Positions 2,642 to 53,005 of a stretch of 64,000 nucleotides of DNA are shown piece after piece. The stretch is taken from positions 248,001 to 312,000 of the IMG/VR virus record IMGVR_UViG_3300032242_003291; one strand, written 5' to 3'. Under the pieces are notes generated by a model. The model had not been told where the DNA came from. It saw only the letters and a program-made list of their open reading frames with translations, and did not search any database. How positions within the stretch are numbered: position 1 is the first letter of the stretch; each line of letters opens with the position of its first letter. The translations under genes and the position numbers were made by a program.

Positions 2642-4402
2642 TTAATCAATCCTGATTACATAAATTAAATCATTTTGTATTCTTACTTCATCAACATTTC
2701 CGTCATAACTACCAATACATCCACCATAACCATCCGCATCAATTACCCCTTGGATAAAATCATCTTTATCTATGTAATCCTGCCAATCAAGTCCAAAGTC
2801 ATTCATAAAGTATTGTGGGTCCCTTTTAACATCATTAACTAAGTCATCTACTTTCTCATCCATTAAGTCCTCGGGAAATTCACCTTCAGGATTTTCTTCA
2901 ATCTCTGTAATTTCATCATTATATTCTTCGATTCTTTCATTAAGTTCTTCAATTTTCTCATCTATGTCTGAATCATCATCACTACCATAATGGTCCTCTA
3001 AACTCGAGATTGTTTTTTCTGCTTGCTCAATTCTCATTTTTAAGATATCAATCTTTTCAACTTGCTCATCTGAAAGTTGTCTATCTTCATCATTGAAATA
3101 TGAATCAGGATTTTGATAAACATCTTCATTGTAGATTTCATAAGCTCTGTGTGCCACAGCTTCTTCATCTATATAAGACTGTGCAAACCCTTCGCTAAAT
3201 CCTTCATAACCAATATCGTCAATTAAACTTTCGACATAATCGTAACAACTTCTGTCCATATCCCCTTCGAATCCTGCAGCATATCTATTACCATCAACAG
3301 GGCTATCAATTAATTCAAATTCAGCTAAACTGTAATGTTCTCCTGTTGGAATTATATTATATACATCCACCTTATCTTCTTTCAAACTTTCAATCTCTTC
3401 TTCTAAAGATTCTATTTGGTCTAACAATCCTCTATCTACGTCCTCACCATTATCATATTGGCGTTGTAATTCGTCAATTTGATTTTGGATAGAATCTATT
3501 TCGGCTCTATCTTCATTTGTTAGTACTTCAACCTCTCCATTATCAACTAAATAATTCAATACCGCATGTGCAAGTAAACCTTCATTTGGACAATTGGGAC
3601 CTAACTCCCATTCATTATTTTGTCTTCTTTCTTGAGATTCTTCTTGTCTCCCGTGTTTTAATTTTTTTAGTCTTAATTTGTCTTGTCTTTCTCTTTCTTT
3701 TTTTGCTTCTTCTTGGTCTCTAAAAACTTTTAATTGGGACGCATATTCTTCTTCCATATAAGAATTAATTGCATCACTTATTTTATTATATTCAACTGAA
3801 CCTAAAGTTTCAGGTAACGATTTTATAGTTTCATCAACCGCATTATAAGAAGACTTATCATCATTGAATTTTTGTAAAATTGCTATTTTATATAATGGGT
3901 CGTCGGTTTTCTTTGTTTTATCCAAAATATAAAATAACTTACCATCCTCATTATATCTTTTGAATTGATAATCAGAGTCCGCAGCAGTACACCATTTAGT
4001 TCCTCTACCGTAATAACAAGAAGCTTCATGTGTTTGTGGATTTACAACAAAAAATCTTGGGTCTTCATAAACAACGTTACCTCCCTCAACTTTCTTAATT
4101 TGTCTTCTTGGTTTATTTTCATAATCCTTTAATGCTTGAATTAGTTGTCCTGCATTTTTATATTCATTAATATCTGGCTGTGGAAGATTAGTTGATATTT
4201 TTTCAAATTTATTAATTGCATCAACAAGTAATGGAAAATTTTCATCAAAATTTACCGTATCAAAACTCTTACCAACCCACATCAAAAACTTTTGAGGTAT
4301 TGTATCAAGAATTTTTGTTATTTGTTCCTGAGTAAATTTTCTACCGTAACTGTTTTTGAAGTCATCAACTCTGTTCTCTAATATAATTTCTGAAAATTTC
4401 AT
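2642..4402 (-). CDS. putative head-packaged protein: leader + GTKWCT domain + very acidic C-terminal half
   Basis: MKFSEIILE leader; ASCYYGRGTKWCTAA motif shared with 17927..19240 and 39429..40316; D/E-rich tail; TATTTAT upstream. Confidence 0.7.
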   Translation of the reverse strand: MKFSEIILENRVDDFKNSYGRKFTQEQITKILDTIPQKFLMWVGKSFDTVNFDENFPLLVDAINKFEKISTNLPQPDINEYKNAGQLIQALKDYENKPRRQIKKVEGGNVVYEDPRFFVVNPQTHEASCYYGRGTKWCTAADSDYQFKRYNEDGKLFYILDKTKKTDDPLYKIAILQKFNDDKSSYNAVDETIKSLPETLGSVEYNKISDAINSYMEEEYASQLKVFRDQEEAKKERERQDKLRLKKLKHGRQEESQERRQNNEWELGPNCPNEGLLAHAVLNYLVDNGEVEVLTNEDRAEIDSIQNQIDELQRQYDNGEDVDRGLLDQIESLEEEIESLKEDKVDVYNIIPTGEHYSLAEFELIDSPVDGNRYAAGFEGDMDRSCYDYVESLIDDIGYEGFSEGFAQSYIDEEAVAHRAYEIYNEDVYQNPDSYFNDEDRQLSDEQVEKIDILKMRIEQAEKTISSLEDHYGSDDDSDIDEKIEELNERIEEYNDEITEIEENPEGEFPEDLMDEKVDDLVNDVKRDPQYFMNDFGLDWQDYIDKDDFIQGVIDADGYGGCIGSYDGNVDEVRIQNDLIYVIRID

Positions 4403-4416
4403 TCAACTTTTATTTA

Positions 4417-4461
4417 ATAAATATCTTTTGTATTGTATAATTGGATTACAAACATATTTAT
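4417..4461. promoter_or_regulatory. divergent pair of TATTTAT putative late promoters
   Basis: TATTTAT on minus at 4417-4423 (gene starting 4402) and on plus at 4455-4461 (gene starting 4491). Confidence 0.6.
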
Positions 4462-4490
4462 AATAATAAACAAAACAAAATTTAATAATC

Positions 4491-4664: not shown

Positions 4665-4697
4665 ATCAAAGATTAAGGTATTTGTAAAAACTATTTC

Positions 4698-4725: not shown

Positions 4726-4737
4726 GTATTTATATGT

Positions 4738-5742
4738 ATGGAATATTCTTGGGACGACATAGTAGAAAAATTCAATAATAATGATTTAGACGTTGAAAAG
4801 TATTTTAACGATTATCAGACATTTTTTAGTATCTTGAAAAAAAGAGGGTTAATGAGTGAAGTTGACCCAAAAAATGGCACTTCTAGCGAATACTGGCAAA
4901 ATGAATATCTATTATGGTTATATGAAAATGATAAAGAAAAGTATTACAAATGGATTCAAGAATTGTTGAACGATATTGTTATTGAAAATGGAATTGCATA
5001 CTTAGAAGTAACAGATAGGTCTGAATTATCTAAATTGTTTTGTAAGAACAGTAGAGGTGATATCAGTCGTGATACCATCGAATCTATTTTGTCAGGGGAA
5101 CGTGATTGGGAGCCTTACTACGATACAACGGATGATGTTTATGGAGACGTCATTGAAGAACTAACACCTGAAAATGATAAAAGATTGTGTGAATACATTG
5201 TTGAAACTTTAAAAGGTCAACAAGTTATAGGTTTGAGTGAAGAATTAGAACAAATCGCATCAGAACAAGGTCATCCTGATTATGTCGAAGTTAACATGGA
5301 AAATGTTAAAAGAATAGTTGACGACAAAGAATCTATGATTGAACTTTTAGATAACCAACTACACGATTTGAAAAGTGAGTTGTATTCAATCCATAGTAGT
5401 GCATATAACGACGCATATGAATCAGAGATTTGGGACGAGATATTTGATGAATTAAAAATTTATATAATAGGTTCAGGTGAATGGATAACCAAATCACACC
5501 CTTATAAAAAAAATACAGAAATTCAATATTTTAAGGTACCTTTGGTAGACTTTGAATCAAATATAAACGATTACTTAATTAATAATAAAGGTTACGGTCA
5601 ATCGGGGACGTTGGAGTATCACGGTAGTTACATCGATATCATGGCTGAAGATAGAGATTGTTTAAGTATAAGAGTACCTGATTATCCTGATTCAAGGAAA
5701 GTTGATAAAAATATTAATTTATACTTCAAAGATTATATTTAA
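4738..5742 (+). CDS. acidic hypothetical protein
   Basis: 334 aa, D/E-rich; TATTTAT at 4727-4733. Confidence 0.75.
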   Translation: MEYSWDDIVEKFNNNDLDVEKYFNDYQTFFSILKKRGLMSEVDPKNGTSSEYWQNEYLLWLYENDKEKYYKWIQELLNDIVIENGIAYLEVTDRSELSKLFCKNSRGDISRDTIESILSGERDWEPYYDTTDDVYGDVIEELTPENDKRLCEYIVETLKGQQVIGLSEELEQIASEQGHPDYVEVNMENVKRIVDDKESMIELLDNQLHDLKSELYSIHSSAYNDAYESEIWDEIFDELKIYIIGSGEWITKSHPYKKNTEIQYFKVPLVDFESNINDYLINNKGYGQSGTLEYHGSYIDIMAEDRDCLSIRVPDYPDSRKVDKNINLYFKDYI

Positions 5743-6530
5743 TGAAAATTGAACAAATGATACATAAAGTTTTAGAGGAACAAAGAGGTTTTACCCCACA
5801 CAAAAATCCTCCTAAGAACATCAAGAATATTCTATCTCAGATTGAATTGTTTGAAATGTATCCAAAGATTTTTGCCCTTGTGATTAAAGATGATAAGTTA
5901 AGAGCCAGAGTATTCATGCGTTACCAAGAGTTCTACGAATCGGACTCTGATTCATTCAGAGGTAAAGGATTCAAATGGTATGACTACGTTAAATTCTATA
6001 AAGAAAAGACAAAGAAAGATTACTTCTCATATCACGAAGATTGGGCAGGATATAATATTCCATGTACTTCTATTGAGTCATGTATGGCTGTTATCCCCGA
6101 CCTTAACTTCTATGATTTAATAATGTTCAGTGTTGTTGATACAATCAGAGAACAAGTTGGTAGTGAAAACTTTTATTTAATTGGTATTGACCAATCAACA
6201 GGAGAAGACCCATCACTTATATTCCATGAGGTTGCTCACGGATTATGGTTTTCATCCGCAGTATACAAAGCAAAACAATCTAAGAACATAGAAAGATTAA
6301 AACCTTTTGTTAGAGATGCAGTTGCGAAAAAGATTACTGGTATGGGTTATGGTGAAAACGTTGTGGATGATGAGATTCAAGCATATTTATCTACAGGTAT
6401 TGGTGATAACATGACAAGAATAAAAGATATCAAACAAGCCCAAATTCCATTCAAAGAAACATTTGATTCTTATGCTGGTAAAATAAAACCAAAAAAGATT
6501 CAAATTGATTGGAGTACTGACTTAGACTAA
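5742..6530 (+). CDS. putative zincin metallopeptidase with N-terminal leader
   Basis: IFHEVAHG (HEXXH) plus downstream DEIQAY; MKIEQMIHKVLEEQ leader. Confidence 0.65.
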   Translation: MKIEQMIHKVLEEQRGFTPHKNPPKNIKNILSQIELFEMYPKIFALVIKDDKLRARVFMRYQEFYESDSDSFRGKGFKWYDYVKFYKEKTKKDYFSYHEDWAGYNIPCTSIESCMAVIPDLNFYDLIMFSVVDTIREQVGSENFYLIGIDQSTGEDPSLIFHEVAHGLWFSSAVYKAKQSKNIERLKPFVRDAVAKKITGMGYGENVVDDEIQAYLSTGIGDNMTRIKDIKQAQIPFKETFDSYAGKIKPKKIQIDWSTDLD

Positions 6531-7384
6531 TGATTAAATTTATTAACATATTAGAAAACGTTATATCAGAACAAAAGAAATATCAATTTCATCCTGAAGT
6601 ACTTCAGAAGTTAAAAGATATTACAAATAGACTTTGGAATGATAGAAAAAAGAAATACAAAGGGAGAACATTAGTCGACTCTTTAATATTTCACGTTGCT
6701 GATGGTACTGAAGGTTTAGTTAAGTTTTATGTAAATCCTGATTTACCATACATTGGTTTCATGGATACTGAACCAAAAAAATCTACAAATCCTAAAGATA
6801 TATACATTGATGTTAATCCTAAAAACTACGAAAGTAAAAAGAATTTATATCTCACACTATATCATGAAATGATTCATGCGTCAGACCCTAATTTGTCAAC
6901 CAAGATGACTAAAAAATACATGTCAACTTATGATGAGAATAGTGATGAAAAGTATTGGGGTCATCCAATTGAATTCTTTGCAATAACTAACGAATTTTTG
7001 GAAGGCTTGATAAATGAATTCCAACTAAGAGTGTTCAGATTAAGAAATGTTGAAAATAAAAAAGCACTAATCAAATCATTTAATAACATATTAAATTATT
7101 TTTCAAAAGGTGAAAAGTTATCAAGATTATCTTTGAATATTTTGGACAGAATAAATGATACTGGTGTAGTTGAAGATAAATTCAAAAGAGTTTTTTCAGA
7201 TATTTCAGTTGAAAGTCCAATTTCTTCTGAATTAGTTAAGTCTGAAGATGAAGAACCATATTATTTAACATATATTAATTTAATCAAAAAATACAATCCG
7301 AAAATTTGGACAAGGTTTTTAACGATGTTATATAAAGCAAAGGAAGATGTTGAAGATGTGATAAATAAAAAGGGACTTAAATAA
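6530..7384 (+). CDS. putative zincin metallopeptidase with N-terminal leader
   Basis: LYHEMIHA (HEXXH) plus HPIEFFA; [15 protein letters not shown] leader. Confidence 0.65.
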
Positions 7385-7393
7385 GTCCCTTTT
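7368..7393. terminator. bidirectional terminator hairpin within overlapping 3' ends of convergent genes
   Basis: AAAAGGGACTTA-AA-TAAGTCCCTTTT. Confidence 0.7.
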
Positions 7394-15297: not shown

Positions 15298-15298
15298 A

Positions 15299-17578: not shown

Positions 17579-17602
17579 CACTGCAAATATAAGAAAATAA
17601 AA

Positions 17603-17624
17603 AAGGAGAACAAACGTTCTCCTT
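17603..17624 (-). terminator. intrinsic terminator
   Basis: AAGGAGAAC...GTTCTCCTT hairpin with A-run on plus (U-run on minus). Confidence 0.6.
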
Positions 17625-17627
17625 ATA

Positions 17628-17909: not shown

Positions 17910-17926
17910 AGATTAAATTTTTGAGA

Positions 17927-19240
17927 TTACTCTTGAAGGTCCCACATTCCTCCACCCATATCAGTACCTTTTGCTTTGATTGATTCAGGAACATTAACAT
18001 TATTACTTCCTTTTAAGTTTAAGAAGTATAAGTTTGGAATGTCCGCAATACATTCAGGAATTGATTTCAACTTAGGGTTATTAATTAACGCTAAGAATCT
18101 TAACTTAGGTAATGAACAAATTGCATCTGGTACACTTTCAATACAGTTATCCAAAAGAATCATATGTAAGTTTTTGAATCTTCCGATTTCCTGTGGAATA
18201 TTAATAGTGATATCACTCTTGTTATCTCTATTTTGAATTTGGAATTCTTGTAGAGTATCAGGTAAATTACCAATCAAATCATCTAAACCATAAAGAGCAA
18301 TGAATTTACCAATTGCACCATGACTGAAACTATCAATTATTAATTTTTCACCACCAACCGTAAGTCCTTTCGCAAATTCAGGTTTGAATAACTCTTTCAA
18401 CTCTTTCATTGGACCATTTAAGTATTGAACCAAATCAATCTGATGGTCATGAATATCCATGAATTGATTGGATGGGAAATGGAATTGATATCTTTCTTTT
18501 GGTAAACCTGATGGGTGAACGTTTGTATCAGTTGGTTTGTAAACCACATATAATGGACCATCCTTAATATATCTATCGAACCAATTCAAACCAGGTCCTG
18601 AAGTACACCATCTTGTTTCTTGTTGATTACCACCGTAAAAACATGCAGCTTCTTTTCCTAACGCACCTTTATCTTTGATTTCAACAACTCTCCACTCATC
18701 ACCATCATATAAAAGTTTTGAGCCAGGATGAACTGTTGCCGTTTTTCTTTCAGTTTTAGTTGTTGTTGCAAGAGTCAAATCAAAATCTTTAACCGCATCA
18801 AATAACTGACGAGGAGTTAATTTGTTAATATCTTTTTCACCTTTAATCTTATTCTTGAATCTATCGAATTTTGTAAGGTCCTCAGTTACTTTATATAAAT
18901 CCTCCATAAAAAGGTCCTTAACTTGCTTAACCTCTTTCTCATATCCATTATCACCAGGTTGTCTTTCTGTTGTTGGAGTTAAGTAATTTTTAATTAACCA
19001 TTGAACATACTTACCCACCTTGATTTTCTCAAGTTCTTTTGGGTCTTTACTATCAGGGTCAACGTTGTTCATTCTTGACGTTGGGTCAGCCTGAACTAAT
19101 GCCATGAACTCTTGTTTAGTCAGTTTTGGTTTAGTTTTATTCCCTTTTTTATCCTCACTAGGTTTTGTTAGTGCGTTGTATAAAACCTCAAACCTTGACT
19201 GTTCTGATATTATTGATTTAAGTATTGACGTAAATTTCAT
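17927..19240 (-). CDS. leader + WCT domain + C-terminal leucine-rich repeats
   Basis: MKFTSILKSIISEQ; AACFYGGNQQETRWCTS; LRR units IPQEIGRFKNLHMILL / VPDAICSLPKLRFLAL / IPECIADIPNLYFLNL. Confidence 0.75.
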   Translation of the reverse strand: MKFTSILKSIISEQSRFEVLYNALTKPSEDKKGNKTKPKLTKQEFMALVQADPTSRMNNVDPDSKDPKELEKIKVGKYVQWLIKNYLTPTTERQPGDNGYEKEVKQVKDLFMEDLYKVTEDLTKFDRFKNKIKGEKDINKLTPRQLFDAVKDFDLTLATTTKTERKTATVHPGSKLLYDGDEWRVVEIKDKGALGKEAACFYGGNQQETRWCTSGPGLNWFDRYIKDGPLYVVYKPTDTNVHPSGLPKERYQFHFPSNQFMDIHDHQIDLVQYLNGPMKELKELFKPEFAKGLTVGGEKLIIDSFSHGAIGKFIALYGLDDLIGNLPDTLQEFQIQNRDNKSDITINIPQEIGRFKNLHMILLDNCIESVPDAICSLPKLRFLALINNPKLKSIPECIADIPNLYFLNLKGSNNVNVPESIKAKGTDMGGGMWDLQE

Positions 19241-19283
19241 CTAAAAAGATTTAATTATAAATATATTGTGAGAGCAAAAATAA

Positions 19284-23626: not shown

Positions 23627-25309
23627 TTATTGAGTTTTTCTACTATAAGATATTAAATTTTTCATCTTATTCATTTCTTCATTAACAATATTTTGTTTTT
23701 TTTCATCTTTAGACTCAGACAATTTATTAAGAACTTTAGTCCCTTTACTTGATTTCAAATTTGCTGTTGCTTTGTCATCACCTGCATTATCAACTGGTGT
23801 TGGGTATCTCTGATAAGACGCTGACTTTTGTTCTTTTCCAAATTCATTGTTTTTGTAGTTCTTCATAAATCTTTCTCCAACTTTACTTGGAACTACATTT
23901 CCTAAAGCATTTCCTTCTTCATCCATCTCTGCGTTTCCCGTAGTTCTATGACCTTTCAAATACTTTTCGATATTCTTATCGTTAGGTTTGATTTCATCAT
24001 AAACAATGTTTGTTTGACCAGGATATGAAAAGTATTCAATATATTCTTCAACTGCATCTGAAGGCATATATTTTTTTACCTTGGGATTTTTCTCTAAATT
24101 GTAATTACTTTCAGGAAAATTATCGGGACTTTCACTATATTCACCTTTACTACCAGCTTTAACGTAATCTTTCATTTTTTTAACAACTTCTTTAGCATAG
24201 TCGTCGTTTTCTTTTTTAGATGCGTCTTGAGCCTTAACAGTTTTTTTCAAACCTTCAGGTGATTTTTTTGCTATGTTATCTTTCTCAGCCTTATCTTTAA
24301 CTTTTTGTTCAACAACTAATTTTTCAATTAAGTCAATTAATTCGTTTTCAGTTAATTTAAGACTATTAGTATTTTCTTTAATTCCTTTAAGTGTTAAAGC
24401 AAGATTAACTTGTTTTAATAATTTAGCGTCAGCTGCAGATAACTTTTTATCACCTTCACCTTTCTTCATCAATTCTTTTTTCAAAGATTTTAATTTAGCT
24501 TGTGGGATTTTGTCTCCTTCAGCAACACCTAATTTCTTGTGTAGCGCTCCTTTTTTCATTCCTGTTTTTTGAATCCACTTTTCTTTACCTTCTTTAACAG
24601 GATATTTGTGACCATCAACTTCAAAACTATCTTCATGATTTTTTTTAGCATTAGCTAAAGCACCTGAGAAAGCATTACCTTCTTCAGTTTCTGCCTCGTC
24701 CATATCTCTTGCAGTTCTAACTCTAAATGGTTTACCTCCAAACTTATCTTTATATCTATTAAAAAACTTATCTCCGTGTTCTTTATCAAACCAAATTTGA
24801 TTACTTCCATGTTTGTCCATCAATGATGGAAAATCATGAAATTCTTCTTCATCATAATCTTCCAAATCATCTGCATTTGCAGGTCTATCATGTTCGTCGA
24901 ACCAACCATGTTCGTCATCAAATGAACCCATCATTTTTGGTTTCTTCAATCCTTTTCCAACATAAGTTGGTTCATTTTGAGATAATTCTTCTGCTTCGTC
25001 TTCAGCATCCTCATCTCCATCATAATCACCTGGTGTTGATGATTCTTCTCCGTCTTTATCAAAATAGAACCATTCGTCCATTTCTTCACTTTCTTTCGTT
25101 TCTTTCTTTTTACTTCTAAGTTTTTTGAAATCAGCAGCATCAAGTTCACCTTTCGGCTCTGCAACATCTAATTTCTTTTGGTTACCTTTAAGAGACTCTT
25201 TAGTCTCAACTTCAGTCCAATCTTCAGTTAGTTGTTTTACTTTACTCTCGATTTCCTCATTCAAAATTTTGGAAACCAATTTATCAATATTTGTGTTAGT
25301 TTTATTCAT
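23627..25309 (-). CDS. charged head/core (scaffold-like) protein
   Basis: KILNEE, LTENELIDLIEKLVVEQ and IVNEE motifs; highly charged; TATTTAT at 25325-25331. Confidence 0.6.
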   Translation of the reverse strand: MNKTNTNIDKLVSKILNEEIESKVKQLTEDWTEVETKESLKGNQKKLDVAEPKGELDAADFKKLRSKKKETKESEEMDEWFYFDKDGEESSTPGDYDGDEDAEDEAEELSQNEPTYVGKGLKKPKMMGSFDDEHGWFDEHDRPANADDLEDYDEEEFHDFPSLMDKHGSNQIWFDKEHGDKFFNRYKDKFGGKPFRVRTARDMDEAETEEGNAFSGALANAKKNHEDSFEVDGHKYPVKEGKEKWIQKTGMKKGALHKKLGVAEGDKIPQAKLKSLKKELMKKGEGDKKLSAADAKLLKQVNLALTLKGIKENTNSLKLTENELIDLIEKLVVEQKVKDKAEKDNIAKKSPEGLKKTVKAQDASKKENDDYAKEVVKKMKDYVKAGSKGEYSESPDNFPESNYNLEKNPKVKKYMPSDAVEEYIEYFSYPGQTNIVYDEIKPNDKNIEKYLKGHRTTGNAEMDEEGNALGNVVPSKVGERFMKNYKNNEFGKEQKSASYQRYPTPVDNAGDDKATANLKSSKGTKVLNKLSESKDEKKQNIVNEEMNKMKNLISYSRKTQ

Positions 25310-25334
25310 CACGTGATTTTTTATATAAATATCT

Positions 25335-30842: not shown

Positions 30843-33188
30843 TTAAAGTGAATCTAAAAATTGTAAATTATGCGAATATGAACAACTTTTGATATATCTT
30901 GACATAAATTCTGTATTCAAATTACCATTTGAATCAATTGGTAGTTTTAATTTTAATTCAGCTAATCTAGTTTTACTTGCCCCTCTTCCATAATTAAATC
31001 TATAATTTTCTCTATTAATAAGTGTAACAATAAATAAAAGAATATATTGATTGTTTTCAAATTTTGGTTTCAATTTTTCAACGTGGTCACTAGCGGCAAA
31101 ATTTAAATGTTGGTAATTACAAAATCCCAAAACAGAACTTTCAACAGTAATTACTTGTCCACTTTCTGTTTGGATGTCAGTGAATCTTTCAACACCATTA
31201 TTTGTTGCTTGTGTTGTAACATAGGGATATTCACCGCCATCAGCAAACTTAATAATATCAGGTGGCGTTGTTTTCGTTCCAGTTATTTCAAAGATTTCAG
31301 GTAAATAAAAAGTTTTCCATTCAACTTGAGATAATTCAATTTGTTCCTCTTCTTGAGATTTCATATAAACTTCCTCAACAAGTCTATTTGAAAATAAAAA
31401 TGTTGAATATCTATGTAACTCATCGACAAATGAATTTTTATTTAGAGTTGAATAGTCTGTTTCCAAATAATTTTCTGCGGACCATTCAGATAAGGGTGTT
31501 ATTGTTTTACAAACGGAAAACCCTGGTTCGTCTTGTCTGTTAATATAATCATTAACCCATTTTTGTTTTATTTTAGTCCACTTACTATGAAAATCTACTC
31601 TACCTGAAGTTTTTCTCTTTACAAATCCATCGTCTTTATAATACCCAAAATAAACTTTTTTATCAAAATTGTGTGGTTTATGTGCTGTGAATATCATAAT
31701 ACAAGAAACTACACCGACGTTTGAATTATGAAATAGTTCATTGGGCATAGATAATACTGCCTCGAGTGTATGATTTTGTAGAATTTTGTCTTTTACTGCC
31801 ATAACTTTCTTGCTCACAGTCACCGCTGAGGACATCGGTAAAATCGCTATACAAGTACCGTTCACTTCCAAACAATCAAGATTTGTATATACAAATTCTA
31901 ATTCTTCAGTGTCATTTTTTTTATCACCTTTATACGGTGGATTTAAAAATCCGACTGTTGGTTTTTTTTCTTTGATTGTAATAATATTTTTTTCATCAAA
32001 ACAACTTCCGCTTAATAAATTTTTTGTTTTCATATTATGTATCAAAAAATTTGAAATTAATAAAGAATATATGTGAGACGAATATTCGACTCCTATTAAA
32101 TTATTTTCTTTAATTTTTGAAATTAAAGATTCATCTCCTTTAGCATCTTCAATCATATACTTCATTGCAGAGATTAGAAATCCTCCTGTACCTGTGCAAT
32201 TATCCAAAACGACACTATTTTTATTAACTTGAGCTAATTCTGAAAAAAATTCAGTAATGTGAGGTGGCGTCAACACAATACCTAATCCTTTGTCTGAGTT
32301 AGAATATGATAAAAAAATGTTATATATCTCACCTAAAACGTCTCTAAATTTGTATGTGTCAATAAAATTTTTGATATTTAATTCAACATCAATTATTATA
32401 TCTCTCAAAACATTTGGATTTGTAGTAAGTGCTGTATCAGTTTTAATAAAATCAAAATGGGTTTTCATTATTTCTAATTGGCGTTTACTCAAATCAACTT
32501 CTTTATCTAAGTATGAGTAAAAAGAAGTTATTAAATACTCCGCAAGTTGTGTAGGGTCAATAAGATTTCTATATGAATTTTGAAAATTTATATTTTCTAA
32601 AGCAACTAAAATAGCACTTAGGAGTAAACTACGATAATTTTCAGCTATTTTCGCACTATGAAGTTTTGTGTTTAAATTTTGAGCAAAAGTTCTCAATTTT
32701 TCATAATCTTGTAATATTACTTTTTCATTTTTAGTGTAAAAATTGGAGTATGATTCAATATCCAAAAGTTTATTACCTAAAACATTTTCTATTTTATATG
32801 AATTACGCTCCTGAAAAAAGTGACTTACTTTATAGTTTGAAGGGGAATTTCCACTTATCGCAATAGATAAAACATCATAATGTTTTGATAAAAAATTGGA
32901 GTAGTGTTTAACACCGTCTACAGCATATTTGACTTCATCAACATTACCATTGTTTTCATGTAAGGAAATCTCACCCTTACATTCAGTAATAATCACTAAA
33001 TCAGGGTGATTAAAAATTTGTATTATATGCTCAGGATATCCCGCACCTCCTTTCTTTGATTTAGACGCACCTTTTAATGCATTTTTGATTTTATTGTTAT
33101 CAGATTGATGGGTTTCTATTTTTCCGATACCTTCTAATTGAGATTTGAAATGGTCTCTTGTAAATTCTTGAATAATTGTTTCGTTCAT
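30843..33188 (-). CDS. fused restriction-modification enzyme (type IIG / BcgI-like): nuclease + N6-adenine MTase + target-recognition domain
   Basis: GYPEH...ITECK nuclease-like motif; LTPPHIT, VLDNCTGTGGFL, NPPY; C-terminal HsdS-like WKTFYL.EIF...PYVT...NNGV. Confidence 0.8.
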   Translation of the reverse strand: MNETIIQEFTRDHFKSQLEGIGKIETHQSDNNKIKNALKGASKSKKGGAGYPEHIIQIFNHPDLVIITECKGEISLHENNGNVDEVKYAVDGVKHYSNFLSKHYDVLSIAISGNSPSNYKVSHFFQERNSYKIENVLGNKLLDIESYSNFYTKNEKVILQDYEKLRTFAQNLNTKLHSAKIAENYRSLLLSAILVALENINFQNSYRNLIDPTQLAEYLITSFYSYLDKEVDLSKRQLEIMKTHFDFIKTDTALTTNPNVLRDIIIDVELNIKNFIDTYKFRDVLGEIYNIFLSYSNSDKGLGIVLTPPHITEFFSELAQVNKNSVVLDNCTGTGGFLISAMKYMIEDAKGDESLISKIKENNLIGVEYSSHIYSLLISNFLIHNMKTKNLLSGSCFDEKNIITIKEKKPTVGFLNPPYKGDKKNDTEELEFVYTNLDCLEVNGTCIAILPMSSAVTVSKKVMAVKDKILQNHTLEAVLSMPNELFHNSNVGVVSCIMIFTAHKPHNFDKKVYFGYYKDDGFVKRKTSGRVDFHSKWTKIKQKWVNDYINRQDEPGFSVCKTITPLSEWSAENYLETDYSTLNKNSFVDELHRYSTFLFSNRLVEEVYMKSQEEEQIELSQVEWKTFYLPEIFEITGTKTTPPDIIKFADGGEYPYVTTQATNNGVERFTDIQTESGQVITVESSVLGFCNYQHLNFAASDHVEKLKPKFENNQYILLFIVTLINRENYRFNYGRGASKTRLAELKLKLPIDSNGNLNTEFMSRYIKSCSYSHNLQFLDSL

Positions 33189-39228: not shown

Positions 39229-39454
39229 TGATTATTGGGTTTTGTTGTTCTTCAAATGGATTTTGTCCTTTATTTATGTGTCCACATTCGTCACACTTAT
39301 AAATTGGAAATGGTACTGTTGTATCTTCAGGAGCTCCTTGTAATCTTGAAACAAATTTCAAGTAAATTACCTCTCTGAAGTATACCGAATCACACTTATC
39401 GCATTTAACTGTGGGAGAATCCCTTAAATTAACCCTCCGTCCTAAATCTTGCAT
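39218..39454 (-). CDS. zinc-ribbon protein
   Basis: CDKC...CDECG. Confidence 0.7.
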   Translation of the reverse strand: MQDLGRRVNLRDSPTVKCDKCDSVYFREVIYLKFVSRLQGAPEDTTVPFPIYKCDECGHINKGQNPFEEQQNPIISEE

Positions 39455-40316
39455 ATTCTTCGTTTTTTAATGTTTTATGTAGGTTGTTTATTGTTTCCTG
39501 TAAATTAGAAATATAAGTAAGATTTCTGGTTTGTTCAAGTATTTGAATGTGTTCTGATAATGTTTTGAAATCTAAAGAACCTAATGTTGTTGTAAATTTA
39601 TCTATGAAATCTTTTGATTTTCTTGTTTTTTTCATGTGAACGAAATAAGCCCTAAAATACCAAAAAATTGTTTGGAGTTCATTTTCAGTCCACCCATTAT
39701 TCAAAAGAGCGGTATCTGCAACATCTGAATCATTAGCATTATAAACTAAAACTTCACCTGAGAACGCACTAAAATTATACTCAAGATACAATGCGAATTT
39801 ATTATAGTTTGTTTGTCTTTTACCTGTCTTATCAATAATATAACCAAGTAATCCGTTTCTAACGTATCGTTGAAAGGTGCTTGTATCATTTCTACTAGCC
39901 GTACACCATTTGGTGCCTGCACCGTATTTTAATGAACCTCTATGAGTTAAAGGTGATAATAACAAATAATCATCAGTCTCATGTAAAACTATAACATGTT
40001 CGTCTCGGATAAAAGTTTTTTCATCTTTGATTTCTTCTGCCCGAAGTATAGTTTTTCTTAACAGACTAAGACTGGTATAATCCTTGGCGTAAATGTCTTT
40101 GTTATCTATGTAAGGTAACAACTCATCGAACTTGTTCACTAAATCTATAAGACCATCAGTTGTCGATGGACAATCGTTATAACCTCTATTTGACCAACTT
40201 TTTAATAAGTAATCTAAATATTTTTTTGTTGGTGTCTTATCTGCATCGACAAGTTTATTAAATGTTCTTGCTATGACTCCCTCATATTTGAGTTTTAATT
40301 CATCAACTTTTGACAT
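39429..40316 (-). CDS. GTKWCT-domain protein (paralogue of 2642..4402)
   Basis: GSLKYGAGTKWCTAS...F.RY...G.L.YI.DK; TACCTTTG upstream. Confidence 0.75.
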   Translation of the reverse strand: MSKVDELKLKYEGVIARTFNKLVDADKTPTKKYLDYLLKSWSNRGYNDCPSTTDGLIDLVNKFDELLPYIDNKDIYAKDYTSLSLLRKTILRAEEIKDEKTFIRDEHVIVLHETDDYLLLSPLTHRGSLKYGAGTKWCTASRNDTSTFQRYVRNGLLGYIIDKTGKRQTNYNKFALYLEYNFSAFSGEVLVYNANDSDVADTALLNNGWTENELQTIFWYFRAYFVHMKKTRKSKDFIDKFTTTLGSLDFKTLSEHIQILEQTRNLTYISNLQETINNLHKTLKNEEYARFRTEG

Positions 40317-49403: not shown

Positions 49404-52400
49404 TTAACAAGCTACCGAACTATATGTTACGTTAGGATTATCGGTACCTGAAACACAACTTCCACAAATACTTGCACCCTGAGGGAAGTATTGTCCTTGT
49501 CCGTTACATACATCAGTTTGTCCACTATTTGTTCCCGCCTGAACAAGGACAAAGAATGATGCCGTACTATTCAAATAAATAGGGTTAAGACATTGTGTAC
49601 CACTATTACCATTTTGATAATAAACAGTAACATTCACTAGTGTATCCACACTAACATTATTATCCAAATAAACTGATGCACCCATAAAGTCATCAATAGT
49701 TCCTCCAACGCAAGGTTGCATAAACCCACCTGCTTGAGTTACTTTTGATGGTGGTTTTGTTTGACAAGTATTACAATCATCATAGGTTATTGTAGGTGCG
49801 GAAGAGAAATAATCTCCTGTAAACGTAATTGGCGTTGTATTTTGCGGTGCAATATAGTTAGAATCATATCTACCTAAATAAATCCAACAATTACCACTAC
49901 CATCTTTGAATGTTTGATTTGCCGATATTGTGAATGATAATGGTAATGTTTGTATTACTGTTATTATGTTTCCTGATATTGTTGAACAACTTTGGGCAAC
50001 ATAGACATATACTGGCGATGGAGTCATAGTCGGAGTTTCAGTTGGCGTTGGTGTGTTGGTCGCGGTTTCTGTAGGTGTTTGTGTCATAGTTGGAGTCGGT
50101 GTAGGTGTATCACTACCTGTTGGAGTTGGAGAACTACCAATAGTTGGAGTAGTCGATGGTGTTGCTGTTTGGCTTGCAGTTTGAGTTGGTGTTACAGGAG
50201 ATGTTGTAACAGGTGTACTTGTTTGAGTTGGTGTAGGTGTAGGGGTGTTTGTTGCTGTAGTTGTAACTGATGGGGTAGGAGTTGGATAGATTGAACAATA
50301 AGCACAAGAACCATATATTTGATATATGAAGTTAACAGTAGAATTAGATGAAATATTACTGTCGTCTCTTGTATACGTAACACACATATTTTCATTGTTG
50401 ATGTTTGCAAAGAATGTTGTTCCTGTAATAATACTTACCCCACTAAACACTAATGAATCTGAAGTATATAATTCTTTACCTGTATCACAATTTGTTAAAA
50501 CTTTTGCAGATACACAACTAAATCTCTCATCTAACATAACAAATGTTGCCTTACCTTGAACATCAACAGTTCTTGTTAACGTCACAGATGGTGTATTTGT
50601 TATTGTTGGAGTAATTGCTGGTGTGTAACCACTCATAGTGAATGAAATTGCTTTGTTATCACAAATCATTCCTGTTGGTGAAGGTGTTGGTGTTAAACCA
50701 AATGAGTTTATATCAAAATTAACATCAGCACAAGCAACACTCGGTGTTGGTGTTGGCAATGGTTCCCAATCACAATCAAAATATGCATTGAAATCAAAAG
50801 TATTACAATTGATTGGCGTTGGTGTTGGTGTAGGACAAACTCCTCCTGTGAATTCATTTGCAGAAATATCAGGACATTGAGAATAACATGGTGTTGCTCC
50901 TTGTAATATACAAGAACCACCAAGACTATTACTTAAACACCATGCACTTCCGTTATAATAAATGTATGCTGTTGTAACACCATCCCCAACATAATACTGT
51001 CTTGTATTATATGTTCCCGCATCCGTGTAATTTCCATTGTAATTCAATAGACTTGATAAAGATGACCTTAAACAAAATGTACTATAAGAACATGGTGCTG
51101 CGGTTGATGAAACCGTTGGTGTCATTGTTGGTGTTGTATATGGTGTTGGTGTTGGACTTGGATTTAATAAACACGATTTACAATCAGAATAACTTGGTGC
51201 ACCTAAATCGGGACCACCAGGACCTGAGAATTCAATCCAAGAATAACATTCTCCACTATAAATGTAAGTCGCACCAACAAATGCAGTGTCTTCTTCAACG
51301 TTTGCATAAAATACCGTTTGGTCTGTACACTTACTAAGTAAAGAGGCTTTATTAGCTGACCTTGGACAAATATTATCACCACATCCTCCATCAGTCATCA
51401 AGAAAGAAACCCCATATCCATTATATTGTGGACCTGTACCATCATTTATCACACTCGTTGCACAACCTGTAAATTGAGTGCTACCTGTAATATAATATGT
51501 GACACCAATTGTGGATGGAATTGCTGGGTCATTAAATCTAAAAATGTTAGTTGCGTTAGAACAATCTACAAATTGAACAGTATAACCTAATGTAGGTGAA
51601 GGTGTTGGAGTCTGTGTTGGCGTCTGTGTTGGCGTTTCAGTATTAGTTGGAGTTGGTGTTGGAGTATCACTACCTGTCGGTGTTGGCGTTTCAGTATTAG
51701 TTGGAGTTGGTGTTGGAGTATCACTACCTGTTGGTGTTGGCGTTTCAGTATTAGTTTGAGTTGGAGTCTGAGTTGGCGTTTCAGTATTAGTTGGAGTTGG
51801 TGTTGGAGTATCACTACCTGTAGGAGTTTGAGTTGGAGTTATTGTTGGGTCAGGTGTTGAAGTTGGTGTCGGGTCTGGTGGAGGTGCAATACATGCCAAA
51901 TCAAAACAATCCGCAGGTGCTGGAAATAATAAAGTATCTAAATCAAAATCAAATGGCTGTGGTGTTTGACTTGGAGCAACGTCAGGTAACAAATAACAAG
52001 TGTATATAGAAGTTTGAACCCAACTACCTTGTAAACCACCATTTGTACTTCTTCCTATTTTTGTACCTACACCAGTACAAGGTGACATACTATAATAGTA
52101 GTAGGACACGGAAGGTGTAGATGCTGGTGTTGAATCAGGTGTAGATGCTGGTGTTGAATCAGGTGTAGATGCTGGTGTTGAATCAGGTGTTGGTGTTGGT
52201 GTAGTAATATCACCTGGACAATATTGACCACAAGAACCCAAGTCGGTTAAAAATCCAACATATGGGCCAGTTATACTAATTGCACATACACTATCACCAT
52301 AATTTATATCTACGTTACTGTAACTTACATTATTACAATCTGTATAATAAAACCCACCGTAATTACCAGAATTATTATAATATGTGGTACATTGAATACA

Positions 52401-52724
52401 TGGGATTGTAGGTGTAACAGTTGGAGTTGGGTCTGGTGTTGGTGGTGGTCCACAAAGGATTCCAGTGTTAATGAATGAACTATTTAATGCATCAATTTGT
52501 GCATCATTCTGATAATAGAAAGCAGTTGTAGTTCCAAATTCATCAAAACAGGTTGAAGCACTATAAGTTCCTGAAGAAGTGTAACTTTCAGTTATTGTGT
52601 TACCTAAACAGTCTTGATACATCATATAAACTGTTCCGTCAACATATGGATAACTTCCGCTGTTGCCGAATGAGTTTGCAATGTCAACACCATCAATATA
52701 AAGCTCTAAATATTTACACGCCAT
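49404..52724 (-). CDS. large Cys-rich, mucin-like Pro/Thr-rich virion protein
   Basis: small Cys-rich domains separated by TPTPT tracts; TATTTAT at 52741-52747. Confidence 0.75.
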   Translation of the reverse strand: MACKYLELYIDGVDIANSFGNSGSYPYVDGTVYMMYQDCLGNTITESYTSSGTYSASTCFDEFGTTTAFYYQNDAQIDALNSSFINTGILCGPPPTPDPTPTVTPTIPCIQCTTYYNNSGNYGGFYYTDCNNVSYSNVDINYGDSVCAISITGPYVGFLTDLGSCGQYCPGDITTPTPTPDSTPASTPDSTPASTPDSTPASTPSVSYYYYSMSPCTGVGTKIGRSTNGGLQGSWVQTSIYTCYLLPDVAPSQTPQPFDFDLDTLLFPAPADCFDLACIAPPPDPTPTSTPDPTITPTQTPTGSDTPTPTPTNTETPTQTPTQTNTETPTPTGSDTPTPTPTNTETPTPTGSDTPTPTPTNTETPTQTPTQTPTPSPTLGYTVQFVDCSNATNIFRFNDPAIPSTIGVTYYITGSTQFTGCATSVINDGTGPQYNGYGVSFLMTDGGCGDNICPRSANKASLLSKCTDQTVFYANVEEDTAFVGATYIYSGECYSWIEFSGPGGPDLGAPSYSDCKSCLLNPSPTPTPYTTPTMTPTVSSTAAPCSYSTFCLRSSLSSLLNYNGNYTDAGTYNTRQYYVGDGVTTAYIYYNGSAWCLSNSLGGSCILQGATPCYSQCPDISANEFTGGVCPTPTPTPINCNTFDFNAYFDCDWEPLPTPTPSVACADVNFDINSFGLTPTPSPTGMICDNKAISFTMSGYTPAITPTITNTPSVTLTRTVDVQGKATFVMLDERFSCVSAKVLTNCDTGKELYTSDSLVFSGVSIITGTTFFANINNENMCVTYTRDDSNISSNSTVNFIYQIYGSCAYCSIYPTPTPSVTTTATNTPTPTPTQTSTPVTTSPVTPTQTASQTATPSTTPTIGSSPTPTGSDTPTPTPTMTQTPTETATNTPTPTETPTMTPSPVYVYVAQSCSTISGNIITVIQTLPLSFTISANQTFKDGSGNCWIYLGRYDSNYIAPQNTTPITFTGDYFSSAPTITYDDCNTCQTKPPSKVTQAGGFMQPCVGGTIDDFMGASVYLDNNVSVDTLVNVTVYYQNGNSGTQCLNPIYLNSTASFFVLVQAGTNSGQTDVCNGQGQYFPQGASICGSCVSGTDNPNVTYSSVAC
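51600..52200. repeat. near-perfect DNA repeats encoding Pro/Thr linkers
   Basis: GTTGGCGTTTCAGTATTAGTTGGAGTTGGTGTTGGAGTATCACTACCTG x3 (about 51628-51820) and a 24-bp GGTGTAGATGCTGGTGTTGAATCA tandem (about 52114-52190). Confidence 0.8.
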
Positions 52725-52828
52725 ATCATTATCTTACACTATAAATAACCAGTTATTTGTTTTTATACAAGAAAATATAGTTTTATCTAAAACTAAATAA
52801 AGGGCGGTCAGGACTATATTTATGATAT

Positions 52829-53005
52829 ATGAAACTTCTAAAGACAATAAAAAAAATTATACAAGAGGCTGAGGAGCAATACAACGCTGCGTCCGAAACA
52901 AATTTACCATTAGAAGAAATCGACAGATTAGAGAAACATTATAAAGATTCTCTCAGATTACTTAGATTGTATAATTCGAAACAAGAAAAAAAAGAAAAAA
53001 AATAA
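52829..53005 (+). CDS. small leader-bearing late protein (58 aa), not in ORF track
   Basis: MKLLKTIKKIIQEAEEQYNAASETNLPLEEIDRLEKHYKDSLRLLRLYNSKQEKKEKK*; TATTTAT at 52817-52823. Confidence 0.7.
   Translation: MKLLKTIKKIIQEAEEQYNAASETNLPLEEIDRLEKHYKDSLRLLRLYNSKQEKKEKK

What the first reader, a model, noticed from the sequence alone, without database searches (positions are those of the whole stretch)
2642..53005. Shared N-terminal leader ending in (I/L/V)xE on unrelated late proteins: a capsid-targeting code for injected cargo
Seen: MKFSEIILE (4402), MKIEQMIHKVLEE-Q (5742), [15 protein letters not shown] (6530), MKFTSILKSIISE-Q (19240), ..KLVSKILNE-E (25309) and MKLLKTIKKIIQE-A (52829) begin otherwise unrelated proteins, all in TATTTAT-led units. 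Genes with TAnnTTTG promoters lack the leader. Established: T4 internal proteins use a ~10 aa capsid-targeting sequence (MKTYQEFIAE) removed by the prohead protease after (I/L)xE. Inference: these proteins are loaded into the head and co-injected with the DNA. The cargo includes two metallopeptidases, two WCT-domain proteins, an LRR fusion and an acidic protein, which together look like an uncharacterised effector arsenal, possibly anti-defence.
Basis: partly seen in the sequence, partly recalled or inferred. Interest (0 to 1): 0.75.

Follow-up and report, generated by a model that had tools for sequence, protein, structure and literature searches.

The report
Capsid-targeting leaders on late phage proteins
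A 317-kb uncultured freshwater phage distantly related to T4 puts a short N-terminal tag that looks like T4's capsid-targeting, protease-cleaved leader on about 45 late proteins. These proteins are therefore probably loaded into the phage head, but no experiment has shown it yet.

Summary
All six leaders sit at the stated coordinates behind TATTTAT motifs.

**Enrichment.** Across the whole 317-kb genome, the pattern h..hh.E (h = hydrophobic residue) occurs in the first 35 residues of 48 of 392 proteins. About 17 are expected by chance. A larger second class, MK(I/Y)I(I/L)TE-(S/Q)Q, lies outside the window.

**Late genes.** 42 of 45 profile-positive genes lie in TATTTAT-led units (p = 6e-10).

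**T4-type machinery.**
- The phage is a distant T4 relative of the freshwater "bS21 phage" lineage.
- It has a gp21-family (S77) prohead protease with its catalytic His and Ser.
- Its capsid protein has I-N-E|A aligned to T4's L-T-E|A maturation site.
- The leader spacing equals that of T4's capsid-targeting sequence (Y4, F7, I8, E10).

**Evolutionary behaviour.**
- Orthologues keep hh.E while the rest of the leader changes in sequence and length.
- One orthologue lost half its body but kept the leader.
- An XacN1 homologue has no leader.

**Virion evidence.** The "WCT" passenger domain has a homologue found by mass spectrometry in PA5oct virions. It also occurs in a metagenomic tandem array behind near-canonical T4 leaders.

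**Not shown.** Cleavage, packaging and ejection were not tested. The "effector/anti-defence" reading is speculative. This is the T4 mechanism in a new lineage.

The parts
2642..4402 (-). 586-aa acidic protein (pI 4.3) with a WCT domain (GTKWCTA, about residues 100-200) and a long acidic coiled C-terminal half. The leader is MKFSEIILE|N (nt 4376-4402).
   Evidence: paralogue family of six. Orthologues keep I(L/I)xE at residue 9, with variable P2. One orthologue (L021) lacks the WCT half but keeps the leader MKIFRILKE|D.
4417..4423 (-). TATTTAT late-promoter-like motif, 14 nt upstream of the ATG of gene 2642-4402.
   Evidence: The motif is 20-fold enriched in the -50..-1 region of genes.
4727..4733 (+). 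TATTTAT motif 4 nt upstream of the ATG of 4738-5742. It heads the three-gene + strand unit 4738-7384.
   Evidence: conserved in all related loci.
4738..5742 (+). 334-aa acidic protein (pI 4.3). Its variable N-terminus, MEYSWDDIVE|K, ends in hhE just before the conserved FNNNDLDV.
   Evidence: Orthologues read DIIE|K, GFLE|S, DFVE|M and DFLE|M; one has EIVD.
5742..6530 (+). 262-aa HExxH protein (HEVAH at residue 162). The leader is MKIEQMIHKVLEE|Q (nt 5742-5780).
   Evidence: Orthologue leaders differ in sequence and length but all keep hh.E before QRGF. The XacN1 homologue ORF432 keeps HETRH and has no leader. The family is virus-only, with weak zincin-like structural neighbours.
6530..7384 (+). 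284-aa HExxH protein (HEMIH at residue 112). The leader is MIKFINILE|NVISE|Q (nt 6530-6571).
   Evidence: Peptidase_M91 scores 20.3 bits, below the 25-bit cut-off. Orthologues keep (V/I)(I/L)(S/T)E at residue 14, with P1' Q, A or G. The family is virus-only.
17927..19240 (-). 437-aa protein made of a leader, a helical region, a WCT domain (residues 165-300, ETRWCTS) and C-terminal leucine-rich repeats. The leader is MKFTSILKSIISE|Q (nt 19202-19240).
   Evidence: In 15 orthologues I11, E13 and Q14 are invariant, while P2 is S, A, L or V.
19257..19263 (-). TATTTAT motif 16 nt upstream of the ATG of 17927-19240.
23627..25309 (-). 560-aa highly charged protein. The leader is MNKTNTNIDKLVSKILNE|E (nt 25256-25309). 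A second, internal copy of the composite motif (LKLTENELIDLIEKLVVEQ) lies at about residue 319. This may be a core or scaffold-like protein rather than an effector.
   Evidence: No Pfam or PHROG family.
25325..25331 (-). TATTTAT motif 15 nt upstream of the ATG at 25309.
39429..40316 (-). 295-aa WCT-family paralogue with only a short V-D-E at residue 6 (MSKVDE|L). It is a weak candidate.
52817..52823 (+). TATTTAT motif 5 nt upstream of the ATG of 52829-53005.
   Evidence: It is conserved in the 321-kb relative G001.
52829..53005 (+). 58-aa protein with the leader MKLLKTIKKIIQE|A (nt 52829-52867). Cleavage would leave a 45-residue charged peptide.
   Evidence: The orthologue in G001 is 86% identical and has the same leader and promoter.
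30843..33188 (-). 781-aa N6 DNA methylase behind TATTTAT, starting MNETIIQE|F. This is a doubtful candidate.
   Evidence: N6_Mtase E=9e-26. IIQE is not conserved in a 45%-identical homologue. The gene is absent from the relative G001.

Best explanation
The leaders are the local version of the T4 capsid-targeting propeptide. The proposed steps are as follows.

1. Late in infection the proteins are made from TATTTAT-led units, together with the head genes.
2. An N-terminal amphipathic segment binds the scaffolding core of the prohead. This segment has hydrophobic residues at -6, -3 and -2 relative to a Glu.
3. The phage's gp21-family (Peptidase S77) prohead protease then cuts after that Glu, at (I/L/V)-x-E. 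This releases the mature protein inside the head.
4. Some of these proteins are expected to stay with the DNA and enter the host with it, as T4 IPI-III and Alt do. Others may be core components that are degraded.

Shown here: the motif, its enrichment and its position; the late-promoter link; the protease and its catalytic residues; the homologous I-x-E site in the capsid protein; the modular, motif-preserving evolution of the leader; and virion presence of one passenger family in another phage.

Inferred only: binding to the core, cleavage, packaging, ejection, and any function in the host.
For: 1. T4-type machinery.
- Peptidase_S77 matches at E=1e-22, with His (ELNHPES) and Ser (SRGVGS) aligned to T4 gp21, structure 5JBL.
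- The genome also has a gp23-type capsid protein, a portal and an acidic scaffold.
- The capsid protein's FLINE60|ASS aligns with T4 gp23's FLTE65|AEI.
- The protease itself starts MKNLRILE|A, like T4 gp21's LIE-9.

2. Same code as T4.
- T4 IPII and IPIII start MKTYQEFIAE, gp24 starts MAKINELLRE, Alt starts MELITE, and IPI has ..TITE|A.
- In IPIII, residues 4 and 7 govern targeting and residues 8 and 10 govern processing (PMC9026906). These are positions -6, -3, -2 and 0.

3. Enrichment is z = 8 to 12 over shuffles and internal windows.

4. Late-gene link.
- 42 of 45 profile-positive genes lie in TATTTAT units, against 165 of 347 others (p=6e-10). The promoter was not used to train the profile.
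- Tail and baseplate genes behind the same promoter lack the leader.

5. Evolution.
- P1 Glu and P3 are kept, P2 is free, and the upstream leader varies in sequence and length.
- The leader is kept after loss of the WCT half in L021.
- The leader is absent from the XacN1 homologue.

6. The gene at the position of T4 gp67/68 starts MTFGTIKSIIE|K.

7. WCT passenger domain.
- 69 of 142 diverse family representatives carry h..hh.E in their first 22 residues, against 8.8 +/- 2.8 in shuffles.
- A tandem array of seven genes starts MRAREFI.E or MKSYEFIIEG.
- The PA5oct homologue is a virion protein by ESI-MS/MS, and PA5oct has a T4-like prohead protease.

8. Flavobacterium phage immuto, the nearest cultured relative, shows the same N-terminal enrichment: 22 proteins against 8.9 +/- 2.8.

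9. The constraint is on amino acids, not bases. Glu codon usage at P1 equals the genome ratio, and the hydrophobic positions use many different codons.
Against: - There are no proteomic or N-terminal data for this phage or its lineage.
- The protease-plus-leader complex prediction gave no answer.
- In T4, the only phage where the truth is known, N-terminal hh.E has a positive predictive value of only about 50%. DNA ligase and several early proteins match by chance.
- P1' here is mostly Q, whereas T4 prefers A.
- Some class-2 small proteins may be diverged paralogues that simply kept their N-terminus.
- The iterated profile is circular, so its count of 45 is descriptive and is not a test.
- My gene calls and transcription units are crude.
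Confidence: 0.6

Rival explanations
1. The shared N-terminus is inherited. The proteins would be diverged paralogues that kept a conserved N-terminal helix or strand while their bodies drifted beyond recognition, so no targeting function is implied.
For:
- A few class-2 pairs show residual body similarity.
- A small MKIIITESQ protein shares a fold (TM 0.74-0.78) with several virus-only clusters.
- Many class-2 genes sit in one cluster at 196-210 kb.
Against: - Among 52 leader proteins, only 3 to 4 body pairs are significantly similar.
- The passenger domains are clearly different: HExxH, WCT, LRR, a 58-aa peptide and a charged 560-aa protein.
- Within true orthologues the leader is the fastest-changing part, and only hh.E is kept. 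Retained homology predicts the opposite.
- The leader survives domain loss (L021) and is absent from the XacN1 homologue.
Confidence: 0.12
2. The leader is an uncleaved amphipathic N-terminal helix with another shared role in late infection. Examples would be docking to a phage chaperone or DnaJ, membrane association, or oligomerisation. The Glu would be incidental to helix chemistry.
For: - AlphaFold models residues 3-12 of 17927-19240 as a detached, low-confidence helix.
- The phage encodes DnaJ next to these genes.
- No direct evidence of cleavage exists.
Against: - Across orthologues there is an invariant Glu with a hydrophobic P3 and a free P2. That is the signature of a cleavage site and is more specific than amphipathicity requires.
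- The same I-x-E occurs at the capsid protein's homologous maturation site.
- The spacing is identical to that of the experimentally dissected T4 capsid-targeting sequence.
- The PA5oct homologue is in virions.
Confidence: 0.15
3. The pattern is a by-product of a nucleotide-level or translation-initiation constraint on late mRNAs. This could act through A/T-rich, unstructured 5' coding regions, leaderless transcripts, or selection by the phage ribosomal protein bS21.
For: - TATTTAT lies only 4-5 or 14-16 nt from the ATG, so late mRNAs have very short or no 5' UTRs.
- The lineage encodes bS21, which has been proposed to favour late transcripts (PMC9723584).
- MK(K/I) starts are common in A/T-rich genomes.
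Against: - Shuffling the same N-terminal residues removes the motif.
- The Glu position ranges from residue 7 to 28.
- Codons at P1, P3 and P4 are diverse, and GAA:GAG equals the genome ratio.
- The most highly expressed late genes (sheath, tube, baseplate) lack the leader.
Confidence: 0.05

Closest known systems
[quoted passage not shown]
   Same: - A leader of about 6 to 20 residues on otherwise unrelated proteins.
- Hydrophobic residues at -6, -3 and -2, with Glu at P1.
- A gp21-family S77 protease in the genome.
- Late expression.
- I-T-E (class 2) matches T4 Alt (LITE) and IPI (TITE|A).
- Diverse passengers, some in gene clusters like the T4 IP loci.
   Different: - There are about 45 candidates, against about 10 substrates in T4.
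- Passengers are mostly larger (up to 586 aa) and enzyme-like.
- The consensus differs (MKFxxILxxIIxE-Q and MKIIITE-SQ), and P1' is mostly Q rather than A.
- A composite two-site form occurs (LTE[SN]DLxRLVKRVIKE|Q).
- The host is predicted to be Bacteroidota, and the genome is 317 kb.
- Nothing has been tested experimentally.
Inner-body and ejection proteins of giant phages phiKZ, 201phi2-1 and SPN3US, processed by gp175/gp245 (PMC9026906, PMC5694885, PMC10052503)
   Same: - A jumbo phage with many head proteins.
- N-terminal propeptides removed after Glu by a distant gp21 homologue.
- Paralogue families among the head proteins.
   Different: - Those proteases use (S/A/G)-x-E rather than (I/L/V)-x-E.
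- No short, shared, transferable leader has been defined there.
- The lineage differs (Chimalliviridae-like, with virion RNA polymerase).
- The present phage keeps T4-type capsid, portal and scaffold proteins.
Phage P1 Dar anti-restriction proteins, with N-terminal capsid-targeting signals (PMC9024508, PMC12810830)
   Same: Proteins carried in the head by an N-terminal targeting region and delivered with the DNA to counter host defence.
   Different: - There is no sequence relationship.
- P1 incorporation is hierarchical (it depends on DarA and Hdf) and is not defined by an L/I-x-E leader.
- An anti-defence role is shown in P1 and only guessed here.
Pseudomonas jumbo phage PA5oct virion protein EST35_0205
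   Same: - It contains the WCT domain (hhalign probability 99.2%).
- It starts MKLFEVFTLYE, an L-x-E at residue 11.
- The phage has a T4-like prohead protease.
- The protein was detected in virions by ESI-MS/MS.
   Different: - The host and lineage differ.
- N-terminal processing is not reported in the text I could read.
- It has no LRR domain or acidic tail.

Membership tests
T4-type capsid-targeting propeptide (substrate of a gp21-family protease) | The genome encodes a gp21-family (Peptidase S77) prohead protease with catalytic His and Ser. | tested here: met
   PF03420 at E=1e-22, over the cut-off. phrog_207 at 2.5e-43. Alignment to T4 gp21 (5JBL) keeps ELNHP and SRGxGS.
T4-type capsid-targeting propeptide (substrate of a gp21-family protease) | A short N-terminal leader ends in (L/I)-x-E. 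| tested here: met
The pattern is enriched genome-wide. V is also accepted at P3 in some.
T4-type capsid-targeting propeptide (substrate of a gp21-family protease) | Hydrophobic targeting determinants lie at the positions of IPIII residues 4 and 7 (-6 and -3 from the Glu). | tested here: met
   The h..hh.E spacing is present in 6 of 6 leaders. The T4 determinants are taken from PMC9026906, and the T4 sequences.
T4-type capsid-targeting propeptide (substrate of a gp21-family protease) | The same protease motif is used at the known maturation site of the major capsid protein. | tested here: met
   BLASTP aligns FLINE60|A with T4 gp23 FLTE65|A. This is a sequence inference; cleavage itself is not shown.
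T4-type capsid-targeting propeptide (substrate of a gp21-family protease) | The proteins are expressed late, together with the head genes. | tested here: inconclusive
   The promoter-motif association is strong. No RNA data could be laid, because only one weak RNA run was listed.
T4-type capsid-targeting propeptide (substrate of a gp21-family protease) | The leader is removed and the mature protein is present in proheads or virions. | not testable with these tools
   This needs virion N-terminomics. The only indirect support is the WCT homologue in PA5oct virions.
T4-type capsid-targeting propeptide (substrate of a gp21-family protease) | The leader alone is sufficient to package a foreign protein. 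| not testable with these tools
   This needs a leader-reporter fusion assay. Natural domain swaps hint at modularity (L021, XacN1).
Zincin-type metallopeptidase (the two HExxH proteins, 5742-6530 and 6530-7384) | An HExxH zinc-binding motif is conserved in homologues. | tested here: met
   HEVAH at residue 162 and HEMIH at residue 112. The XacN1 homologue has HETRH.
Zincin-type metallopeptidase (the two HExxH proteins, 5742-6530 and 6530-7384) | A significant match to a curated peptidase family or fold. | tested here: not met
   Peptidase_M91 scores 20.3 bits against a 25-bit cut-off for 6530-7384, and 5742-6530 matches nothing. Atlas neighbours of peptidase type have TM 0.28-0.48 only. 'Metallopeptidase' stays a lead.
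Leucine-rich repeat domain (C-terminus of 17927-19240) | Repeated LxxLxLxxN units forming a beta-alpha solenoid. | tested here: inconclusive
   Three LRR Pfam families match at E=2e-4 to 6e-4, below their cut-offs. The AlphaFold model shows alternating strand-helix units over residues 299-408, with pLDDT 74-93.

The most novel reading that the evidence does not exclude
An abundant freshwater lineage of T4-related jumbo phages of Bacteroidota would load about a tenth of its proteome into the head. That is some 30 to 45 different proteins, including enzyme-like ones. Loading would use a readable two-part N-terminal code (h-T-E|S/Q and hh-x-E|Q). The result would be a phiKZ-scale ejected protein bolus that evolved independently within the T4-type assembly pathway. 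If so, the injected cargo of uncultured T4-like phages could be predicted from sequence alone.
Probability: 0.3. Interest if true: 0.75.

Novelty: new member of a known kind. Interest (0 to 1): 0.6.

Why it matters
If the leaders work as in T4, injected or head-internal proteins could be read directly from the genomes of uncultured phages. This phage's relatives are very common in lake metagenomes: thousands of 78-97% identical orthologues were found. The predicted cargo would be a sizeable set of first-contact proteins acting on Flavobacteriia.

The finding also flags the widespread, unannotated WCT domain as a recurrent capsid passenger. The domain has more than 1,500 clusters and no Pfam family or solved fold. 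In addition, it gives a lineage-specific targeting tag that could be tested in the cultured relative, Flavobacterium phage immuto.

The mechanism itself is not new, so the value lies in scale, predictive use and new cargo families.

Tried and rejected
- **Near-identical DNA in GenBank phages:** none found.
- **Protease plus leader complex prediction:** no answer, so it is not evidence either way.
- **Full-length AlphaFold model of 17927-19240:** mediocre (pLDDT 69), and the LRR would have dominated a fold search. I therefore modelled the WCT domain alone (pLDDT 88).
- **Fold searches for the WCT domain:** Foldseek against the PDB gave TM below 0.3. The wide VIA-align search gave a best Z of 5.0, which is below the noise level. 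No fold or function was assigned.
- **Pfam on nine diverse WCT proteins:** no family found.
- **RNA runs to map late transcription starts:** none was listed for the 5.9-kb stretch, and only one run with a 0.04 word share was listed for one gene.
- **PA5oct supplementary tables for peptide coverage:** not held.
- **N6 DNA methylase 30843-33188 as a DarB-like packaged enzyme:** rejected as a firm candidate. Its IIQE is not conserved in a homologue, and the gene is accessory.
- **DnaJ (MKDYYKILE):** a plain false positive, because this is the start of the J-domain.
- **Iterated profile:** I report it only descriptively, because it is trained on the data it scores.


Full report
**What the window is.** The 64-kb window is bases 248001-312000 of a 317,259-bp IMG/VR virus record with 33% G+C. 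The genome encodes several T4-type head genes:
- a gp23-type major capsid protein (phrog_138, 2.5e-64);
- a gp20-type portal;
- a large terminase;
- a very acidic 537-aa scaffold-like protein;
- a Peptidase_S77 (T4 gp21 family) prohead protease (PF03420, E=1e-22; phrog_207, 2.5e-43).

The nearest capsid proteins in GenBank are at 42-44% identity. They belong to Flavobacterium phage immuto, Microcystis phage Mel-JY01 and a 484-kb uncultured phage.

A 61-aa gene that looks like ribosomal protein bS21, judged by eye from its sequence, lies on the opposite strand between the protease and the portal. This is the arrangement described for the freshwater 'bS21 phages' of Bacteroidota, whose genomes reach 331 kb (PMC9723584). 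Orthologues of one window gene at 78-97% identity number in the thousands in lake and freshwater metagenomes.

**The observation.** Each gene is preceded by TATTTAT or sits in an operon behind one.

TATTTAT is about 20-fold enriched in the 50 bases before genes, and it precedes the sheath, tube, scaffold, protease and portal genes. The Bacteroidota-type TAnnTTTG motif is about 10-fold enriched.

I made a crude gene call of 411 ORFs covering 93.5% of the genome. On it, [ILV]xE is over-represented with its Glu at residue 7 (23 of 397 proteins, against a 1.6% background) and at residues 9-11.

The table gives counts in the first 35 residues of 392 proteins.

| Pattern | Observed | Shuffles of the same residues | Expected from internal windows |
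|---|---|---|---|
| h..hh.E | 48 | 16.9 +/- 3.9 | 16.1 |
| hh.EQ | 16 | 2.3 +/- 1.5 | 1.6 |
| [ILV]TE[SQDNE] | 26 | 3.5 +/- 1.8 | 4.5 |

Outside the window there is a more numerous class, MK(I/Y)I(I/L)TE-(S/Q)Q, mostly in a cluster at 196-210 kb. There is also a composite form, (K)IIRLTE(S/N)DLxRLVKRVIKE-Q, on at least seven proteins.

**Link to late genes.** An iterated profile marks 45 proteins. It is circular, so I use it only to describe the set. Of these, 42 lie in TATTTAT-led units, against 165 of 347 other genes (odds ratio 15, p=6e-10). Promoter information was not used in building the profile. Only 2 of 112 genes in TAnnTTTG-led units score positive.

Abundant late structural genes such as sheath, tube and baseplate start MA, MS or MP and lack the leader. 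The leader is therefore not a general feature of late or highly expressed genes.

**Comparison with T4, using T4 sequences fetched here.** The T4 N-termini are:
- IPII and IPIII: MKTYQEFIAE|A
- gp24: MAKINELLRE|S
- gp22: MLKEQLIAE|A
- gp21: MNEPQLLIE|T
- Alt: MELITE|L
- IPI: ..STITE|A
- gp23: cut at FLTE65|A

The review PMC9026906 states four relevant facts:
- gp21 cleaves after L/I-X-E.
- Propeptides range from 7 residues (Alt) to 65 residues (gp23).
- The first 10 residues of IPIII suffice for head incorporation.
- IPIII residues 4 and 7 matter for targeting, and residues 8 and 10 for processing.

Those residues are positions -6, -3, -2 and 0 relative to the Glu.

The phage's capsid protein aligns FLINE60|ASS with T4's FLTE65|AEI. 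Its protease keeps the catalytic His and Ser and itself starts MKNLRILE|A. The gene at the position of T4 gp67/68, between portal and protease, starts MTFGTIKSIIE|K.

**How predictive is such a motif?** I ran a control on 90 kb of T4 (138 ORFs). N-terminal hh.E within 12 residues picks 16 ORFs. Seven are known gp21 substrates (IPII, IPIII, gp68, gp21, gp22, gp24 and Alt). Two more are the alt.-1 remnant and the head protein gp2. The rest, such as DNA ligase, are chance matches.

The positive predictive value is therefore roughly one half. That figure agrees with the excess seen here, about 30 proteins above expectation.

**Evolutionary behaviour of the leader.**

*Gene 17927-19240.* In 15 orthologues (77-93% identity), I11, E13 and Q14 are invariant, while P2 is S, A, L or V.

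*Gene 5742-6530.* The body is 72-88% identical across related loci, but the leader changes in both sequence and length. Every version keeps hh.E directly before the conserved body. The versions are:
- MKIEQMIHKVLEE|Q
- (M)NIVNNILKVLEE|Q
- MELTNKILSILKE|Q
- MAYVKYILVE|Q
- MKNANKILKVLLE|L

*Gene 2642-4402.* I(L/I)xE at residue 9 is kept. In locus L021 the orthologue has lost the whole WCT half but still starts MKIFRILKE|D.

*A homologue without the leader.* The homologue of 5742-6530 in Xanthomonas phage XacN1 keeps the HExxH motif but has no leader.

*Amino acids or bases?* Codon usage at the Glu equals the genome ratio, and the hydrophobic positions use many different codons. The constraint is therefore on the protein and not on the RNA.

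This pattern is what a modular targeting and cleavage tag predicts. Simple retained homology predicts the opposite.

**The passengers.** Bodies beyond residue 30 are mostly unrelated: only 3 to 4 significant pairs occur among 52 leader proteins.

*The two HExxH proteins.* They belong to virus-only families below Pfam cut-offs. Their structural neighbours are only weakly zincin-like.

*The WCT domain.*
- It has the consensus ..AAC.YG...T.WCTA...F..Y...GPLY...YQFHF...QFMD, read from the alignment.
- It is shared by six paralogues in this genome.
- It occurs in at least 1,525 clusters at 50% identity.
- It has no Pfam family.
- It gives a confident AlphaFold model (pLDDT 88), but no solved structural relative was found.

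*WCT proteins in other phages.*
- Of 142 diverse WCT-family representatives, 69 have h..hh.E within 22 residues of the start, against 8.8 +/- 2.8 in shuffles.
- One metagenomic contig carries seven consecutive genes starting MRAREFI.E, MKSYEFIIEG or MRAWEFISES. Four of them have WCT domains. This is a T4 IP-locus-like array with a near-canonical T4 leader.
- The homologue in Pseudomonas jumbo phage PA5oct is EST35_0205 (hhalign probability 99.2%). It is annotated as a structural protein found by ESI-MS/MS.
- PA5oct has a T4-like prohead protease.

This is the only experimental link to virions, and it comes from another phage.

*The 560-aa charged protein, 23627-25309.* It has an internal copy of the composite motif. 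It may be a core or scaffold-like protein rather than an effector.

**The nearest cultured relative.** Flavobacterium phage immuto shows the same N-terminal enrichment, 22 proteins against 8.9 +/- 2.8. Examples are MKKSELVKLIKE|E and MKLDLLKKLIKE|A. It is a practical model for experiments.

**What is not shown.** There are no data on cleavage, packaging or ejection for this phage. The complex prediction gave no answer. No usable RNA run was found. 'Effector arsenal' and 'anti-defence' remain speculation.

In T4 the same signature also marks proteins that are degraded or that form the shell. Some class-2 small proteins may be diverged paralogues.

**Verdict.** The best explanation is a T4-type capsid-targeting propeptide code read by the S77 protease, with confidence about 0.6 for most of the six. 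This is the T4 mechanism in a new, abundant lineage, with many more passengers and new passenger families.

I found no paper describing this for the lineage in the searchable library.

Noticed in passing
Genome G000:C1:107686-107871 (+), outside the window: This 61-aa gene looks like ribosomal protein bS21 by eye; no family search was run on it. It lies on the opposite strand between the prohead protease and the portal. That is the hallmark context of the freshwater 'bS21 phages' of Bacteroidota (PMC9723584), so the lineage and probable host group can be named.
   Followed up: partly
Whole genome; window examples at 4727-4733 and 52817-52823 (4-5 nt from the ATG) and at 4417-4423, 19257-19263 and 25325-25331 (14-16 nt): The spacing from the end of TATTTAT to the ATG is sharply bimodal. 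35 genes have 4-5 nt and 26 genes have 14-16 nt. Late mRNAs would then be leaderless or have very short 5' UTRs. Alternatively, the motif may act in translation rather than transcription. This could bear on the role of the phage bS21.
   Followed up: no
window 7377-14150 (- strand): This block has 44-51% G+C in a 33% genome. It holds three large paralogous ORFs of 582, 628 and 1023 aa. They belong to a 15-member family that also includes 45509-48463 and 49404-52724. They are probably fibre or receptor-binding proteins, and the composition anomaly is unexplained.
   Followed up: no
window 22854-23036 (-): This 60-aa protein matches the Chlamydia-type histone H1-like protein Hc1 (PF07432, E=5e-19). 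It starts METLEKIKE|LTE|V and lies two genes downstream of the 560-aa leader protein. It may be a DNA-condensing protein packaged with the genome.
   Followed up: no
window 23627-25309, about residue 319: There is an internal copy of the composite leader motif (LKLTENELIDLIEKLVVEQ) in a protein that also has the N-terminal leader. This suggests either internal cleavage, as in T4 core proteins, or a fusion of two leader-bearing modules.
   Followed up: no
L021 (IMGVR_UViG_3300046000_012596), orthologue of window 2642-4402: This orthologue is 347 aa and aligns only from residue 245 of the window protein. It has lost the WCT half, yet it keeps a leader, MKIFRILKE|D, and the TATTTAT promoter.
   Followed up: partly
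L029 (Logan SRR27476766 contig, 7.6 kb): Seven tandem genes all start with a near-canonical T4 capsid-targeting sequence (MRAREFI.E, MKSYEFIIEG or MRAWEFISES). Four carry WCT domains. The array resembles the T4 IP locus, but the source phage is unidentified.
   Followed up: partly
window 30843-33188 (-): This is a 781-aa N6 DNA methylase behind a late-type promoter. It is absent from the 321-kb relative G001, so it is an accessory gene. Its leader-like start is not conserved in a homologue.
   Followed up: yes
window 14998-21254 (-): Leader genes are interspersed with host-like genes. In the syntenic relative these are annotated as a full-length DnaJ (20337-21254), a Dam-type methyltransferase (19284-20123), a thioredoxin and a glutaredoxin.
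   Followed up: no
Genome G000:C1:1-3000, outside the window: There is a run of spurious-looking ORFs rich in M, V, Q and E (MVPQVHQAQTEQ...) at the left end. They are probably the antisense reading of a repetitive, collagen-like or low-complexity gene. I excluded them from all statistics.
   Followed up: no
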